64,000 nucleotides of DNA, taken from the IMG/VR virus record IMGVR_UViG_3300042484_002457, positions 145,544 through 209,543 of that record; one strand, written 5' to 3'. A program made the translations under genes and the position numbers. Under the pieces are notes generated by a model. It saw only the letters and a program-made list of their open reading frames with translations, was not told the origin of the DNA and searched no databases. Below are positions 56,498 to 64,000 of this stretch, in pieces (within the stretch, counting starts at the first letter, position 1; each line of letters begins with the position of its first letter).

Positions 56498-57448
56498 ATG
56501 CAACCTAAATTAGTAAAATGGGTTTTGGCGCACGAGCCCATTGATATTTTTATCAAAGCCGCCGAAAAATTTACCGAAGTCATTGACAAGTTGGCCCCAG
56601 GTCAACTCAAAATAGAAGTTATGACTCTGAGCGAGTACGCAAATCGATACAACAACGGCAAAAAAATTACCAAGCACGATTTATTGCAATTAATGGAAGA
56701 CGATCTCATTGAGATGAGCCAGACATACAGTTATGTGTTAGGTAACAAATACGCACCTGACATGCATGTTGTAGACATGCCTTTTTTATTTCGTGACCAT
56801 GATCATGCTGCCAACGTATTTGAGGGCAAAATTGGTGCTAAGTTGTTAGACAGCTACGGTCATAATAGCAACTTACAAGGTTTAGCGTTTACATATTCGG
56901 GCGGTTTTAGAAATATTCCGTTTAGCAAAAATGTTGCAACACTAAACGACTTGGCCGGAGCTCGTGTGCGGGTGACTTCCAATCCAATTTGCGAAGCAAT
57001 TTTTGAAAGTATTGGTGCTACTCCGGTTACGTTTGATATTGAAGATTTGGCTGATCGCATGGAAGATGGAACTGTAGAAGGCGGCGAAAGCTCGTGGCCA
57101 CGCATTTATGCTTGCCGTCAAAACGAAGTAAGTAATGTAATTTTTGACACCGAACACAATCTGTTGACCACTAATATCATTGCCAACAAACAATGGATGC
57201 AAGGCTTGCCGGTTGAGTTACAAGCCAAAATTAAACAAGCCGCAATTGAAGCGGCACGCCATGAGCGTGACATTAGTGTTGCAGATGTCGAGCGTGTGGG
57301 ATCTCTTGCTCGTGCTGATGGCATTCGTGTTATCAAGTTTTCTGAAGAAGATCAAACTCACTTTAAGAAAGCAACAGAATCAGTTTACACCAAGTTTGAA
57401 GACTACTTTACACCAGGGTTGGTTGACAGCATTCGCACTTTACAGTAA
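56498..57448 (+). CDS. dctP: TRAP transporter DctP-family solute-binding protein, no signal peptide
   Basis: DMPFLFRD..HA, GFRNI, DLAGARVRV, VEGGES, H.L..NII.ANK.W..LP. Confidence 0.85.
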   Translation: MQPKLVKWVLAHEPIDIFIKAAEKFTEVIDKLAPGQLKIEVMTLSEYANRYNNGKKITKHDLLQLMEDDLIEMSQTYSYVLGNKYAPDMHVVDMPFLFRDHDHAANVFEGKIGAKLLDSYGHNSNLQGLAFTYSGGFRNIPFSKNVATLNDLAGARVRVTSNPICEAIFESIGATPVTFDIEDLADRMEDGTVEGGESSWPRIYACRQNEVSNVIFDTEHNLLTTNIIANKQWMQGLPVELQAKIKQAAIEAARHERDISVADVERVGSLARADGIRVIKFSEEDQTHFKKATESVYTKFEDYFTPGLVDSIRTLQ

Positions 57449-57467
57449 ACTACAGTTTATTGCTGTA

Positions 57468-57725
57468 TGAAGCAAAGAGAAAAGGATCCAAGACCCGGGG
57501 GCAGTTCCCGGCATCTCCACCTAAGTGTATGTTGTATATTTAGGTGGGGATGACATAGATATCGATTGGGTCAAGAGTAACAGAGTGGACAGCTCGGCAA
57601 TGTGAAAGCCGTAGGATTGGGGTCTCCCGGTCGTAGAAGCAAAAAACGTAAATGCAAACGACGAACAGTTCGCTTTAGCCGCCTAAACTCGGCTTAGGGT
57701 AGGAAATACCTCGTAACAGAAACCC
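57468..57725 (+). ncRNA. ssrA: circularly permuted (two-piece) tmRNA, tag ANDEQFALAA
   Basis: T-arm and acceptor 3' strand CATCTCC-ACC (57512-57521) precede 5' strand GGGGATG (57546-57552) with G3.U70; intervening hairpin; resume GCA 57654 to TAA 57686; 5' boundary approximate. Confidence 0.9.
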
Positions 57726-57727
57726 CC

Positions 57728-57755
57728 AAAAAGGGGCTTGGCCCCTTTTTCTTTT
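57728..57755 (+). terminator. intrinsic (bidirectional) terminator
   Basis: AAAAAGGGGC-TTG-GCCCCTTTTT. Confidence 0.85.
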
Positions 57756-59910: not shown

Positions 59911-60792
59911 ATGAAGAAAATTATAATTACAGCCGCTTTGTTGGCTACTTGCGCCCTGGCTTCTGCTCAGACCACTATGTACGGTCGTGTCAACGCCACT
60001 GTTGACAGCACTAAAACTGGTGCTATTCGTGCAGACAGCATTGTCAATGACATCAGTCACATTGGCTTCAGCGTCAAAGAAGACCTCGGAGGCGGATTGT
60101 CAGCTCGTGCTGTGATCGAAACCTCTGTGGCCACCCAAGACCCCACCACTGGTGGCAACACTCAATTGGGCAACCGCCAAAGCACAGTTGGCTTGGCCAG
60201 CAAGTTAGGCAGCATTGATGTTGGCCGCAACGTGCATGGTTTGTTTACCACAGCTGGACAAGGCGACGCTTTTGGTGCATTGTATGGCAGCATCGCTGGA
60301 GATGTTCATGACCTGCGTGGTCTGCGACTCAGCAACGGCGTGTTCGCTCGTGTCAACGGCCCATTGGGTACTACCTTGGGTGCTGATCGTACCTACACCG
60401 CTGCAGGCACAGAAACCACTGTTTACAGTGCAACTGGCAAATTAGGCCCTGTCAACGCTGGCGTGGCTCAATTTGAGCAAGGTGCCGAGAAATCAACTGT
60501 GGTCAGTGCCAGCACCAAGCTTGGCAACACTGGCGTGTTCTACAGCTACAGTGACAACCAAGGTGCTGTTGCTGCCAGAGGCAACCTAGTGGGCGTGAGC
60601 CAGAAAGTCGGTGCTTACACTGTGAAAGCTAGCTACGGTGATACCAACACAGCCGTCAAGGCTTACAACGTTGGCGCTGAGTATGCTCTCAGCAAGCGCA
60701 CTGACGTATTGGTCAGCTATCGCAACGTTGACAAGACTGGCACTGCCAATGACATCAAGCAAGTTGGCGTAGGTGTTACACATCGCTTCTGA
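59911..60792 (+). CDS. Gram-negative (betaproteobacterial-type) outer-membrane porin
   Basis: Signal peptide; TMYGRV, SHIGFSVKEDLGGGLSA, YALSKRT, C-terminal VGVTHRF. Confidence 0.9.
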   Translation: MKKIIITAALLATCALASAQTTMYGRVNATVDSTKTGAIRADSIVNDISHIGFSVKEDLGGGLSARAVIETSVATQDPTTGGNTQLGNRQSTVGLASKLGSIDVGRNVHGLFTTAGQGDAFGALYGSIAGDVHDLRGLRLSNGVFARVNGPLGTTLGADRTYTAAGTETTVYSATGKLGPVNAGVAQFEQGAEKSTVVSASTKLGNTGVFYSYSDNQGAVAARGNLVGVSQKVGAYTVKASYGDTNTAVKAYNVGAEYALSKRTDVLVSYRNVDKTGTANDIKQVGVGVTHRF

Positions 60793-61954: not shown

Positions 61955-61994
61955 TCGAACTCTGCTAAATACTATGGTATTAGATGGAGTTCGA
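61955..61994 (+). promoter_or_regulatory. SD-sequestering hairpin with late promoter in the loop
   Basis: TCGAACTC 61955-61962 / GAGTTCGA 61987-61994 covers GGAG; TAAATA 61966-61971. Confidence 0.75.
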
Positions 61995-61995
61995 T

Positions 61996-62472
61996 ATGAA
62001 AAAAGTTTGTCCCAAATGCGGCACATTACATGAAAAGAATGGTAATTTTTGCTCAAGAAGTTGTGCAAATTCCAGGTCCTGGACTGTTGATGCAAAGCAG
62101 AAAAAAAGTAAAGCATTGAAGAAATTCATTGCAGAAAACCCAATCTGGGAGGAGCAGCGCCTTGCTGCTATGCCCAAAATGATTGAAAATTTGAAACAAA
62201 CTTTGCTTGAAAAAAACAACCTTAGGTTTTCTGAAGGAAAAATAACAAGCAGAGAAGCCATTAAGAAACAACTAATTGCATTACACGGAGAAATCTGTAG
62301 CGTATGCAGTCTTAGTGCTCATTGGCATGGGCACTTCTTATCGTTGCATGTTGATCATGTTGATGGTAATAGTAAAAATAATATGCCAGATAACGTTAGA
62401 CTACTGTGCCCAAATTGTCATAGTCAGACTGATACGTATGCTGGAAAGAAGCATAGAAAGATTAAGATCTAA
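61996..62472 (+). CDS. HNH endonuclease inserted in tRNA cluster
   Basis: CPKC...FCSRSCAN; CSVC...LHVDHVDGN..NN...NVRLLCPNCH. Confidence 0.9.
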   Translation: MKKVCPKCGTLHEKNGNFCSRSCANSRSWTVDAKQKKSKALKKFIAENPIWEEQRLAAMPKMIENLKQTLLEKNNLRFSEGKITSREAIKKQLIALHGEICSVCSLSAHWHGHFLSLHVDHVDGNSKNNMPDNVRLLCPNCHSQTDTYAGKKHRKIKI

Positions 62473-62562
62473 ATTAGATCCACCAGTTTTATAGGAGAGT
62501 CGCTGCGAAGCGAATTCTTAAACGACCCGTAGAACTCCCGGGCGTCCTGTAGTTAGTATTTT

Positions 62563-62648
62563 GGAGTCGTAGGAAAATTGGTAACCCCAGTGGACTGTAA
62601 ATCCGCCGCCCTAGTGCATTGCTGGTTCAACTCCAGCCGGCTCCACCA
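62563..62648 (+). tRNA. tRNA-Tyr(GTA)
   Basis: GGAGTCG/CGGCTCC, GTGGA-CTGTAAA-TCCGC, long V arm, CCA. Confidence 0.95.
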
Positions 62649-62653
62649 ATTTA

Positions 62654-62729
62654 GGTCTTAAAGTGTTCATGGACGCACGATGGCTTGTCACGCCATAAGA
62701 GTGGGGATCGTTACCCCCTAAGACCGCCA
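62654..62729 (+). tRNA. tRNA-Asp(GTC), second copy
   Basis: GGTCTTA/TAAGACC, ATGGC-TTGTCAC-GCCAT, T-loop ATCGTTA, CCA. Confidence 0.9.
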
Positions 62730-62732
62730 AGT

Positions 62733-62942
62733 TTTGAAAGTGTCAGCAAGTGAAGTCACGTTATGCAGTATTCTTCGAAGGTACTGAGTAATAGAAGGCA
62801 AGCGGGTTCGACTCCCGACCGATCGGAAGATCGGTGTAGCATGGTTACCACGCTGGATGAATCCCAAGTGACGTACCGAACCCCGTCCGGACTTGTTAAA
62901 TCGGGTGAATGGTGCCTATAACAGGGTGGCACTACTTTCAAA
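62733..62942 (+). ncRNA. candidate ~210 nt structured RNA with a T-arm-like element
   Basis: TTTGAAAGT/ACTTTCAAA closing stem, GTCAC/GTGAC, CAGTA/TACTG, CGGG-TTCGACT-CCCG, CCGATC-GGAA-GATCGG. Confidence 0.55.
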
Positions 62943-62951
62943 TTCAACAAT

Positions 62952-63029
62952 GGGCTGTGACTGTGTAAATGGCTAACAGCAACCAGTAACTCTGGTTGGT
63001 CAGCGGTTCGACTCCGCTACAGTCCACCA
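62952..63029 (+). tRNA. non-canonical tRNA: Ala-type acceptor (G3.U70) with AAC anticodon
   Basis: GGGCTGT/ACAGTCC-ACCA; AACCA-GTAACTC-TGGTT; AGCGG-TTCGACT-CCGCT. Confidence 0.75.
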
Positions 63030-63035
63030 ATTTTT

Positions 63036-63110
63036 GTCGCATTAGACTTCTGGTGAGGTCATCACCCTTTCAAGGTGACCAGACGGGATCGTAACCCGTA
63101 TGCGACTCCA
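63036..63110 (+). tRNA. tRNA-Glu(TTC), second copy
   Basis: GTCGCAT/ATGCGAC, TCACC-CTTTCAA-GGTGA, T-loop ATCGTAA, U73, CCA. Confidence 0.9.
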
Positions 63111-63196
63111 TTGATAAACACACTCACAGATCCGCCCGAGTAGTAAGGGAGACAGCGACTAACCGTTGAAGGACTGTTTAAAAGTGTGTTTTTCAA
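63111..63196 (+). ncRNA. candidate small multibranch RNA
   Basis: AAACACACT/AGTGTGTTT closing stem, ACAG/CTGT, TCC/GGA, CCC/GGG, CAGCG/CGTTG. Confidence 0.45.
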
Positions 63197-63197
63197 T

Positions 63198-63298
63198 GGG
63201 AGTGTTGCTAATACTGGCCTAAGGGCGAGATTTATATCCTCGTAAGCACCGTCTAGATAAGGCGGCGAATGTGGGTTCAATTCCCACCACTCCTACCA
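63198..63298 (+). tRNA. non-canonical tRNA with TAT (Ile) anticodon and long variable arm
   Basis: GGGAGTG/CACTCCT-ACCA; CGAG-ATTTATATC-CTCG; V arm CCGTCT/AGGCGG; GTGGG-TTCAATT-CCCAC. Confidence 0.75.
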
Positions 63299-63304
63299 AT
63301 TAAA

Positions 63305-63485
63305 CTGATCAGCCTGCGTCTAAAACTCAATGACGATGGGCCCAACTACCGGGGACACCTGTTACTCCACTGCCTCTGGGGATTAAGTTACCAGACTGCT
63401 AGTCACAGTTGTGCTATGTTGGTGGAAGGAAGTGAGCGCAGAGATGCGTTCAGCACCTTTAAACGCAGGGTAGTAGGCGGATCAG
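63305..63485 (+). ncRNA. candidate ~180 nt structured RNA
   Basis: CTGATC/GATCAG and CCTGCGTCTAAA/TTTAAACGCAGG closing helices; GAGCGCA-GAGA-TGCGTTC. Confidence 0.5.
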
Positions 63486-63500
63486 TTTATCCAAAACTGT

Positions 63501-63529
63501 TTGACAAGCAAAGAAGTTTGTCTTACAAT
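63501..63529 (+). promoter_or_regulatory. sigma70-type promoter
   Basis: TTGACA-17-TACAAT. Confidence 0.8.
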
Positions 63530-63537
63530 AGATACTT

Positions 63538-63659
63538 ACTTGATATTGTTGAGCACATTAGGAGTTTGTCTGGGAACCAGTAGAGTAATCTATCCAGAAC
63601 GGAGCAACGTGGGCAAGTTGGTTCTTGCTACGCCGACAGTGTGTTCAACAATATGAAGT
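63538..63659 (+). ncRNA. candidate ~120 nt structured RNA with its own promoter
   Basis: 15 bp ATATTGTTGAGCACA/TGTGTTCAACAATAT stem; TAGA-GTAA-TCTA; GCAAG/CTTGC. Confidence 0.55.
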
Positions 63660-63675
63660 TTGGTAAAATTAGTTG

Positions 63676-63704
63676 TTGACAAGTTCAGCAGTTGATGTTA
63701 CAAT
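63676..63704 (+). promoter_or_regulatory. sigma70-type promoter
   Basis: TTGACA-17-TACAAT. Confidence 0.8.
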
Positions 63705-63709
63705 AAGAT

Positions 63710-64000
63710 TCCGGGGCAGTTTAATGTCCTACTAGGCAGCTTGCTGTCTAGTGAAGAATAACTGTGGTGACACAGCCAAAGGAGGTATGCCTACATAACT
63801 CCGCCAGCAATGGTTCGTTTAGACAAGCCTGCTCAGATCCGCGAGGATCCCTTCACTGATAAGACCGGTGGAGGTAACAATGACGCTGGATGTTGTGGAA
63901 AGAATTAGTGGCTCAAGCGCCTGCAAGGGTAACGCAAGTCATTAGAGAGTAACAGGTGGTGCTGACCTCACAACAAAACCAGTCCAGTTAATTGGTATGA
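63710..64000 (+). ncRNA. 5' part of a large structured ncRNA (truncated by window end)
   Basis: No ORF of 60 aa or more; ACTAGGCAG/CTGTCTAGT, CTGTG-GTGA-CACAG, GATCC-GCGA-GGATC, CCT-GCAA-GGG GNRA hairpins. Confidence 0.6.

What the first reader, a model, noticed from the sequence alone, without database searches (positions are those of the whole stretch)
63676..64000. Start of a large GNRA-rich ncRNA next to the tRNA cluster
Seen: own promoter, at least 290 nt without a long ORF, many short helices capped by GUGA, GCGA and GCAA loops, continuing past the window. Established: giant ornate RNAs such as GOLLD and ROOL occur in phages beside tRNA genes, GOLLD notably in lake metagenomes. Inference: a GOLLD/ROOL-class or new giant RNA; I cannot confirm identity by eye.
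Basis: partly seen in the sequence, partly recalled or inferred. Interest (0 to 1): 0.7.

Follow-up and report, generated by a model that had tools for sequence, protein, structure and literature searches.

The report
Start of a GOLLD RNA gene
The last 325 bases of this window are the promoter and first third of a GOLLD RNA, a known giant cage-forming noncoding RNA of phages, here in an uncultivated lake jumbo phage and cut off by the end of the assembled contig.

Summary
The RNA is GOLLD specifically, not ROOL and not a new class.

- **Position.** The window ends at the end of a 209.5-kb IMG/VR phage contig, so Rfam finds nothing here. The Rfam GOLLD model covers only the 3' part of the RNA, which would begin about 138 nt past the last base.
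- **Relatives.** 65 viral and metagenome contigs share the same 5' segment. In all 53 that are long enough, it runs straight into a GOLLD 3' domain. The 12 of them scanned with Rfam, plus two cultured jumbo phages, score 165-202 bits against a threshold of 150.
- **What the window holds.** A near-consensus promoter (63676-63704) and about 290 nt of the roughly 427-nt 5' domain.
- **Structure.** Covariation supports it: 76 pairs are 98.7% canonical, and 40 show compensatory double changes against at most 29 in shuffles. A 6-bp pseudoknot (63719-24 with 63819-24) also covaries.
- **Expression.** Lake metatranscriptome depth is zero upstream and jumps to 10^4-10^5 from about 63713.
- **Inferred role.** By homology with solved GOLLD structures, this segment would form the cap of an RNA-only cage. 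The biological function is unknown.

This is a new member of a known family.

The parts
63676..63704 (+). Sigma-70-type promoter: -35 TTGACA at 63676-81, 17-nt spacer, extended -10 TGnTACAAT at 63696-63704.
   Evidence: 11 of 12 matches, TG present. Conserved in the closest relatives (A1). RNA depth starts just downstream.
63711..64000 (+). First ~290 nt of the GOLLD RNA, about two thirds of its ~427-nt 5' domain. It is cut by the contig end. The 5' end is inferred to lie at 63710-63719.
   Evidence: Colinear alignment with full-length GOLLD loci. Metatranscriptome depth is 0 at 63416-63712, then 8e3 rising to 5e5. An RNA contig starts at 63719 directly after adapter sequence.
63713..63730 (+). 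Hairpin H1: stem 63713-18 / 63725-30, loop GUUUAA at 63719-24.
   Evidence: Six pairs, three with compensatory double changes.
63719..63824 (+). Pseudoknot or kissing contact: H1 loop 63719-63724 pairs with 63819-63824 (UUAGAC).
   Evidence: All six pairs are canonical in 22 of 22 sequences and three positions covary. No shuffle out of 2000 reaches this; slid partners give 5-55%. It holds in 39 of 43 sequences of the larger set and in Sinorhizobium phage Phosso.
63731..63752 (+). Hairpin H2: 63731-37 / 63746-52. It is absent in some relatives, so it is a peripheral, dispensable helix.
   Evidence: Seven pairs, six with double changes. Missing in L008, L014 and L021.
63762..63775 (+). Hairpin H3 with GUGA tetraloop (63767-70).
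   Evidence: Five pairs, all five with double changes.
63781..63802 (+). Hairpin with a 14-nt loop that contains the invariant CCUAC (63790-94).
   Evidence: Four pairs, three with double changes. CCUAC is invariant in all 22 sequences.
63803..63814 (+). Short hairpin with GCAA tetraloop (63807-10).
   Evidence: C-G to U-A compensation, with GNRA variants GCAA, GAGA, GAAA and GUAA.
63836..63849 (+). Hairpin with GCGA tetraloop (63841-44).
   Evidence: Five pairs, four with double changes.
63850..63874 (+). 9-bp hairpin with loop AUAAGAC.
   Evidence: Nine pairs, five with double changes.
63881..63990 (+). Multi-helix subdomain. Outer helix GCUGGA 63885-90 : UCCAGU 63983-88. Helix 63892-98 / 63968-74. 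Helix 63906-13 / 63937-44 enclosing a GCAA-capped stem (63917-35). Hairpin 63953-64 with the invariant loop GUGGUG.
   Evidence: helices with 3, 6, 2 and 2 double-change pairs. The register of the outer helix rests on compensatory changes in one sequence, L027.
63776..63995 (+). Possible long-range closing helix, CCAA 63776-79 / UUGG 63992-95. It is predicted only.
   Evidence: RNAalifold. All four pairs are invariant in 43 sequences, so they are neither supported nor refuted.

Best explanation
Window 63676-64000 is the promoter and first ~290 nt of a GOLLD RNA gene in an uncultivated freshwater jumbo phage, lying at the edge of the phage's tRNA array. The rest of the gene lies beyond the contig end. 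That missing part is about 140 nt more of the 5' domain, a hairpin, a linker carrying a tRNA-like cloverleaf, and the ~460-nt conserved 3' domain, for about 890 nt in all.

**Shown here**
- The RNA has its own sigma-70-type promoter.
- It is very abundant as a discrete RNA in lake metatranscriptomes.
- The window part folds into at least ten covariation-supported helices. Four are capped by GNRA tetraloops, and one loop-to-junction pseudoknot is also supported.

**Inferred from solved GOLLD structures** (env-38 14-mer and Streptococcus agalactiae 12-mer; PMC12286853, PMC12990946)
[quoted passage not shown] Its GNRA and A-rich loops and kissing loops make intra- and inter-subunit contacts, and it helps set the subunit number.
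- The 3' domains form the ring, and the linker with its tRNA-like element points into the cage interior.

**Unknown.** What the cage does for the phage is not known. The most likely role is tied to the phage's translation takeover, through storage, protection or presentation of the embedded tRNA-like element or through ribosome binding. This is speculation taken from the literature.
For: - **Relatives.** An exact 26-mer and a 20-mer from the window recover 27 IMG/VR and 40 metagenome contigs. The alignment is colinear from the promoter onward.
- **3' domain present.** Rfam RF02032 covers the full model at 188-202 bits in 11 relatives and 165 bits in one relative truncated at its 3' end. It starts 162 nt after window-equivalent position 63976. 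All 53 loci with at least 630 nt downstream carry the 3' domain at +157 to +175.
- **Covariation.**
- **RNA evidence.** Depth is 0 upstream, then 1e4-7e5 across the whole ~810-nt GOLLD of relative L017 in four metatranscriptomes, and 0 again downstream.
- **Domain length.** The 5' domain is about 427 nt here, against 420 nt in env-38 (PMC12286853).
- **Context.** tRNA array, tmRNA and jumbo-phage genes. The nearest cultured phage by DNA polymerase, Sinorhizobium phage Phosso, also carries a GOLLD at 187 bits with the same pseudoknot.
Against: - The window itself has no Rfam GOLLD match, because the modelled part lies past the contig end.
- The continuation in this exact strain was not seen directly. 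Public-run contigs extend only 5-13 nt further with no mismatches, and one loose end of 77 nt that reads like the relatives comes from a variant.
- The best colinear relative over the flank, L007, is only 92% identical and stops at the same base.
- Single-sequence folding is not significant (z = -1.8).
- Cage formation and the cap role come from homology to structures of distant family members. The comparison with the env-38 5' domain was made by eye only.
Confidence: 0.93

Rival explanations
1. A truncated GOLLD remnant. On this reading the phage genome, or a deletion or rearrangement, really ends the gene near base 64000, leaving a 5'-domain-only RNA or a dead fragment.
For: Three independent contigs (window, L007, L011) stop at exactly the same base. 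The own record has no GOLLD 3' domain elsewhere.
Against: - The record is an incomplete fragment, 58% complete with no terminal repeats.
- All three contigs carry the same variant (C at 63967), and they stop exactly 33 nt after it. That is the behaviour of a k-mer assembly graph where co-occurring strains converge.
- DNA depth rises from 14-17 to 60-170 inside the conserved GOLLD segments, which shows that many strains share them.
- Public-run contigs identical to the window run 5-13 nt past base 64000.
- The other 63 of 66 loci continue.
Confidence: 0.04
2. A different giant RNA (ROOL-class or new) that merely neighbours GOLLD genes in relatives, or a separate small RNA upstream of GOLLD.
For: Rfam's GOLLD model does not cover this segment, so membership rests on linkage rather than on a direct model hit.
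Against: - There is no promoter, terminator or gap between this segment and the Rfam-modelled part in relatives, and RNA depth is continuous across the junction.
- The published GOLLD architecture has a ~420-nt 5' region joined to the 3' region in one RNA (PMC12286853), which matches the ~427 nt here.
- There is no ROOL or other Rfam match.
- By eye, env-38 shares the GUGGUG-loop hairpin with a covarying stem and the GGUAACA motif.
Confidence: 0.02
3. Protein-coding or leader sequence for a small peptide.
For: ORFs of 31, 32 and 35 aa exist in the region.
Against: Substitutions among relatives are paired and compensatory rather than codon-patterned. Insertions and deletions remove or add whole hairpins. 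Depth in RNA libraries is extremely high, as expected of a stable structured RNA.
Confidence: 0.01

Closest known systems
GOLLD RNA (Rfam RF02032; Weinberg et al. 2009; cryo-EM structures of env-38, PDB 9MEE, and Streptococcus agalactiae, 9L0R)
   Same: - It is phage-encoded and sits beside a tRNA array in a lake metagenome.
- The RNA is about 890 nt, with a ~427-nt variable 5' domain, a linker carrying a tRNA-like element, and a conserved 3' domain. The last two were seen in relatives.
- It has many GNRA-capped helices and is highly expressed.
   Different: - Only the 5' third is present in the window.
- The 5' domain sequence is not alignable by BLAST to cultured-phage GOLLDs and is not covered by the Rfam or Kretsch alignments, which model only the 3' part.
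- Peripheral helices come and go among relatives.
- The oligomer number for this clade is unknown.
GOLLD of the cultured jumbo phage Sinorhizobium phage Phosso (PV764938.1, about 33.0-34.0 kb; unannotated in the record)
   Same: - Its DNA polymerase is the nearest cultured relative of the window's, at 51.7% aa identity.
- It gives a full Rfam GOLLD hit at 187 bits with an embedded tRNA.
- Its 5' domain has the same order of elements and the same loop-junction pseudoknot, GCUUAG with CUAAGC.
   Different: It is very diverged in sequence, lacks hairpin H2, is a soil phage with an alphaproteobacterial host, and has a 469-kb genome.
ROOL RNA (Rfam RF03087)
   Same: It is also a large ornate phage or prophage RNA near tRNA islands that forms an RNA-only cage (PMC12286853).
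   Different: Its sequence and fold are unrelated, and it gave no Rfam match in the window or in relatives. Its 5' and 3' parts are intertwined rather than forming separate domains.

Membership tests
GOLLD RNA (RF02032) | Match of the conserved 3' domain to the Rfam covariance model at or above 150 bits, in the window itself. | tested here: inconclusive
   There is no hit in the window or anywhere in the own record. The model would start about 138 nt beyond the contig end, so the absence says nothing either way.
GOLLD RNA (RF02032) | The same transcript unit in homologous loci carries the conserved 3' domain. | tested here: met
   Twelve of 12 relatives scanned score 165-202 bits, starting 162 nt after the shared anchor. 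All 53 loci long enough carry the 3' domain by BLAST.
GOLLD RNA (RF02032) | A structured, less conserved 5' domain of about 400 nt precedes the 3' domain. | tested here: met
   About 427 nt lie between the inferred start and the Rfam model start. There are 124 consensus pairs, 63 of them with compensatory changes, and shuffle and slide controls are passed.
GOLLD RNA (RF02032) | Encoded in a phage or prophage, next to or inside a tRNA array. | tested here: met
   The source is an IMG/VR virus record. Eight tRNAs and a tmRNA lie upstream in the window, along with phage DNA polymerase and HNH genes. In relatives tRNA arrays continue downstream.
GOLLD RNA (RF02032) | A variable linker between the domains, sometimes holding a tRNA. 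| tested here: met
   Relatives carry a tRNA-like cloverleaf in the linker with anticodons GUU, UUU, CUU, AUG or UCU. This part lies outside the window.
GOLLD RNA (RF02032) | Expressed as a discrete, abundant RNA of more than 800 nt. | tested here: met
   Metatranscriptome contig depth is 0 in the flanks and 1e4-7e5 across about 810 nt of L017 and across the window part. This is contig-level evidence pooled over related strains, not a measured transcript length.
GOLLD RNA (RF02032) | Assembly into an RNA-only homo-oligomeric cage. | not testable with these tools
   Known for env-38 (14-mer) and S. agalactiae (12-mer) from PMC12286853 and PMC12990946. This clade needs cryo-EM or mass photometry.
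ROOL RNA (RF03087) | Match to the Rfam ROOL model. | tested here: not met
   No match at gathering score, or at E up to 10, in window 62000-64000. None in the relatives' loci.
Group I / group II introns, OLE | Match to the respective Rfam models. | tested here: not met
   No match in the region. The only group I intron hit lies elsewhere, in the tRNA array of L017/L026.

The most novel reading that the evidence does not exclude
In this lake jumbo-phage clade, the tRNA-like cloverleaf in the GOLLD linker may be functional cargo rather than an incidental insertion.

- It is one homologous family.
- Its acceptor stem begins inside an invariant GOLLD motif (GUAG|GUU).
- It lacks an encoded CCA.
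- Its anticodon is switched (Asn, Lys, His or Arg) on nearly identical bodies among nearly identical GOLLDs.

This would fit a cage that stores, shields or presents a specific anticodon stem-loop or tRNA, for example as a decoy against host anticodon nucleases or as a timed tRNA reserve. All of these elements lie just beyond the window end.
Probability: 0.2. Interest if true: 0.65.

Novelty: new member of a known kind. Interest (0 to 1): 0.3.

Why it matters
GOLLD is one of the largest bacterial and phage noncoding RNAs. It is now known to build RNA-only cages larger than a ribosome, yet its function remains unknown. This finding does not change that.

- It shows that the first-stage reader correctly recognised a GOLLD 5' domain from sequence alone, in a place where Rfam is blind because its model covers only the 3' part.
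- It provides a covariation-supported model of the 5' (cap) domain for a freshwater jumbo-phage clade, drawn from 66 loci and including a pseudoknot shared with a cultured phage.
- It shows that the RNA is extremely abundant in lake metatranscriptomes.
- It identifies unannotated GOLLDs in two cultured phages, Sinorhizobium phage Phosso and Xanthomonas phage BUDD, where the function could be tested genetically.

Tried and rejected
- **Rfam on the window.** Neither gathering thresholds nor E up to 10 gave a GOLLD, ROOL, OLE or intron hit. The model's coverage explains this.
- **3' domain elsewhere in the own record.** None was found, so a circular permutation of the contig is not the answer.
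- **BLAST of the window end against 50,697 GenBank phages.** No match. The 5' domain is too diverged, and only the 3' domain of a relative found cultured phages.
- **Scan of 185,579 prokaryote genomes for the 20-mer anchor.** No match, so no host or prophage clue.
- **Extension of this exact strain.** No fetched locus is the same strain. The best, L007, is 92% identical and is also truncated.
- **Larger alignment.** A 43-sequence MAFFT alignment misplaced the single hairpin of the one-hairpin class. Apparent pseudoknot mismatches there were alignment artefacts, leaving four real single-mismatch exceptions.
- **Outer helix register.** I rejected RNAalifold's register (GCUGG with the first CCAG) in favour of the second CCAG, because of compensatory changes in L027. 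This rests on one sequence.
- **Closing helix 63776-79 / 63992-95.** It is invariant, so it stays unsupported.
- **Blind search for further pseudoknots.** It gave mostly noise from invariant columns. CCUAC (63790-94) with an invariant GUAGG just before the linker is complementary but untestable.
- **Papers.** Weinberg 2009 and Morgado 2020 are not held.
- **Comparison with env-38.** The 5' domain was compared by eye from the paper's supplement only, because the sequence could not be passed to the tools by reference.

Full report
**What is at the coordinates**

The window is the last 64 kb of a 209,543-bp IMG/VR virus record, judged 58% complete, so base 64000 is also the contig end.

- **Promoter.** At 63676-63704 there is a near-consensus sigma-70-type promoter: TTGACA, a 17-nt spacer, and TACAAT preceded by TG, matching 11 of 12 positions.
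- **ORFs.** Downstream no ORF on either strand exceeds 35 aa.
- **Single-sequence folding.** On its own the fold is barely better than shuffles (z = -1.8). The single sequence therefore does not prove structure.

**Identity**

Rfam finds nothing in this stretch at gathering thresholds or at E up to 10, and the source record has no GOLLD match anywhere. Related sequences settle the question.

- **Recovering relatives.** An exact 26-mer from the window (63868-63893) occurs in seven other IMG/VR contigs. Two further conserved words raised this to 27 viral contigs. A metagenome scan added 40 more, almost all from lakes and other fresh water.
- **Alignment.** The relatives align colinearly with the window from the promoter onward.
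- **3' domain.** In every relative scanned, Rfam GOLLD (RF02032, threshold 150 bits) matches downstream. Eleven give full model coverage at 188-202 bits. One, cut by its own contig end, gives 165 bits. The model always starts about 162 nt after the shared word AAACCAGTCCAGTTAATTGG, which is window 63976-63995. In the window the model would therefore begin near position 64138, which is 138 nt past the end.
- **Completeness of the pattern.** All 53 loci with at least 630 nt after that word carry the 3' domain at +157 to +175.
- **Why Rfam is blind here.** The Rfam model starts with the hairpin just before the linker and covers only the 3' part (alignment). The same is true of the published GOLLD alignment, whose rows are labelled '3end'.
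[quoted passage not shown] Here the distance from the inferred start to the model start is about 427 nt.

The window therefore holds about two thirds of the 5' domain and about one third of an ~890-nt RNA.

**Structure**

- **Nested pairs.** An alignment of 22 distinct 5' domains (A2) gives an RNAalifold consensus of 124 pairs, 63 with at least one compensatory double change. Restricted to the 76 pairs wholly inside the window, 98.7% of cells are canonical. In 500 column shuffles the figure is 85.3% (maximum 87.2%). Forty pairs show double changes, against a shuffle mean of 23.6 (maximum 29) and 6-11 when partners are slid by 1-3 columns. A 43-sequence set that includes metagenome contigs gives the same picture.
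- **Pseudoknot.** The loop of the first hairpin (63719-24, GUUUAA) pairs with 63819-24 (UUAGAC). All six pairs are canonical in all 22 sequences, three positions covary, and none of 2000 shuffles reaches this. In the larger set 39 of 43 sequences pair perfectly once a misaligned class is read correctly. Covariation cannot tell whether this contact is within one RNA or between subunits.
- **Outer helix of the distal subdomain.** GCUGGA 63885-90 pairs with one of two adjacent CCAG repeats. One divergent sequence, L027, has compensatory changes that favour the second repeat, 63983-88.
- **Closing helix.** A predicted long-range helix (63776-79 / 63992-95) is invariant and so untested.
- **Conserved unpaired elements.** Candidates for tertiary or quaternary contacts are CCUAC (63790-94), CAAGCCUGCUCA (63824-35), GGUAACAAUGACGCUGG, GGAAAGAA and the hairpin loop GUGGUG (63956-61).
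- **Comparison with env-38.** By eye, env-38 has the same GUGGUG-loop hairpin with a changed stem (CGG/CCG instead of CAG/CUG) and a GGUAACA motif after a hairpin. I could not run this comparison with a tool.

**Expression**

- **Window stretch.** In a freshwater metatranscriptome (X17), contig depth on the window is 0 from 63416 to 63712, about 8,000 in 63713-63739, and 10^5 to 5x10^5 up to base 64000. In another run (X19), a contig begins at 63719 immediately after adapter sequence.
- **Full-length relative.** On L017, four metatranscriptomes from three studies show zero depth in both flanks and 10^4 to 7x10^5 across about 810 nt that span both domains.
- **Caveat.** These are assembled contigs pooled over related strains, so the depths are not a measure of expression per cell. 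The sharp boundaries with silent flanks do show an abundant discrete RNA that starts at the predicted promoter.

**Why the contig ends here**

- **Same stop in three contigs.** The window, L007 and L011 come from three different assemblies and stop at exactly the same base. The other 63 loci run on.
- **Shared variant.** All three carry C at 63967 where many relatives have T, and they end exactly 33 nt after that position.
- **Strain mixture.** In DNA runs that hold the window, depth is 14-17 over the strain-specific flank but 60-170 inside the conserved GOLLD segments. Many variant bases are present, so several strains share these words.
- **Short extensions.** Run contigs identical to the window extend 5-13 nt further. 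One loose end continues for 77 nt in the way relatives do.

I conclude that the end is an assembly-graph break. This is an inference; the continuation in this exact strain was not observed.

**Context**

- **Window content.** It carries eight ARAGORN tRNAs, a tmRNA, a family B DNA polymerase, a Lon-like protease and an HNH endonuclease.
- **Nearest cultured phages.** By DNA polymerase these are Sinorhizobium phage Phosso (51.7% aa identity, 469 kb), Agrobacterium phage Atu_ph07 and Rak2-like jumbo phages.
- **Related contigs.** They reach 300-364 kb.
- **Cultured phages with GOLLD.** Phosso and Xanthomonas phage BUDD each carry an unannotated full GOLLD, at 187 and 182 bits. Phosso's 5' domain has the same order of elements and the same pseudoknot, GCUUAG with CUAAGC.

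**Mechanism**

Shown here:
- a promoter-driven, abundant, highly structured noncoding RNA;
- in the window part, at least ten covariation-supported helices, four with GNRA caps, and one pseudoknot.

Inferred from family membership:
- In the two solved full-length GOLLDs, the 5' domains form the caps of an RNA-only cage. They are held by kissing loops and A-minor contacts, and they fix the subunit number (14 in env-38, 12 in S. agalactiae).
- The 3' domains form the ring, and the linker faces the interior (PMC12286853, PMC12990946).
- The window segment would be most of that cap.

The biological role remains unknown. Published ideas include encapsulation, tRNA storage and ribosome binding.

**Verdict**

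The RNA is GOLLD, not ROOL and not a new class. It is a new member of a known family, in the environment and genomic context where the family was first described, so the interest is modest.

The useful by-products are the 5'-domain model and pseudoknot, the demonstration that Rfam cannot see a GOLLD gene truncated after its 5' domain, the switching of anticodons in the linker cloverleaf, and the pointer to cultured phages for genetics.

Noticed in passing
relatives, just past the window end (e.g. L017 7841-7912, L016 11213-11284, L002 3575-3649): The linker of these GOLLDs holds one homologous family of tRNA-like cloverleaves. The acceptor stem starts inside the invariant GOLLD motif GUAG|GUU, has G-U pairs and has no encoded CCA. 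Anticodons differ on near-identical bodies: GUU in most, then UUU, CUU, AUG and UCU. Examples are L041 (UUU) against L065 (UCU), and L033 (GUU) against L008 (AUG). RNA contigs from four runs show the cassette replaced exactly at its borders.
   Followed up: partly
window 63198-63295: A 98-nt tRNA scores 41 bits in Rfam but was not called by ARAGORN here. Homologues in L002, L004, L016 and L024 are called as 90-92-nt 'tRNA-Ile (tat)', that is, a long-variable-arm tRNA with a UAU anticodon. It is conserved just upstream of GOLLD.
   Followed up: partly
window 63501-63660: A second near-consensus promoter (TTGACA-17-TACAAT, 63501-63529) is followed by a 15-bp stem (AUAUUGUUGAGCACA / UGUGUUCAACAAUAU) that encloses a ~95-nt insert. 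In L002 and L005 the same stem encloses a tRNA-like sequence instead. No RNA depth was seen here in run X17.
   Followed up: no
window 63335-63490: A conserved element (GACUGCUAGUCACAG ... GGAAGGAAG, a hairpin, then CCUUUAAAC) is also present upstream of the GOLLD in L008. Run X17 shows RNA depth of 29-103 at 63335-63415. There is no Rfam family for it.
   Followed up: no
window 57410-57752: A phage-encoded tmRNA matches beta_tmRNA at 110 bits and the permuted tmRNA model at 116 bits. Relatives L004 and L007 also carry a permuted tmRNA near the tRNA array.
   Followed up: no
window 59911-60792 (+): A 293-aa ORF has a signal-peptide-like start and a C-terminal Phe, and it looks like a Gram-negative porin. 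It has no PHROG match.
   Followed up: no
window 61984-62472 (+): An HNH endonuclease gene sits inside the tRNA cluster (PHROG 10822, E = 9e-24). tRNA-like fragments lie at 62745-62830 and 62968-63029.
   Followed up: no
window 64000; L007 5230; L011 1: Three independent assemblies break at the same base, 33 nt after a C/T strain variant at 63967. This is probably a k-mer graph effect where co-occurring GOLLD-bearing strains converge.
   Followed up: partly
L028 (IMGVR_UViG_3300008262_000102); L008, L014, L021: These are natural 5'-domain variants. L028 lacks about 250 nt of the 5' domain and goes from the 9-bp hairpin almost directly to the hairpin before the linker. L008, L014 and L021 lack hairpin H2 (63731-52 in the window).
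   Followed up: no
L069 2541-3009 (PV764938.1 33533-34001); L070 1905-2332 (ON758385.1): The cultured phages Sinorhizobium phage Phosso and Xanthomonas phage BUDD carry full GOLLD RNAs (187 and 182 bits) in stretches with no annotated feature.
   Followed up: yes
L017 5559-5751 (and L026): A group I intron (RF00028, 52.7 bits) lies within the tRNA array of a related phage contig.
   Followed up: no
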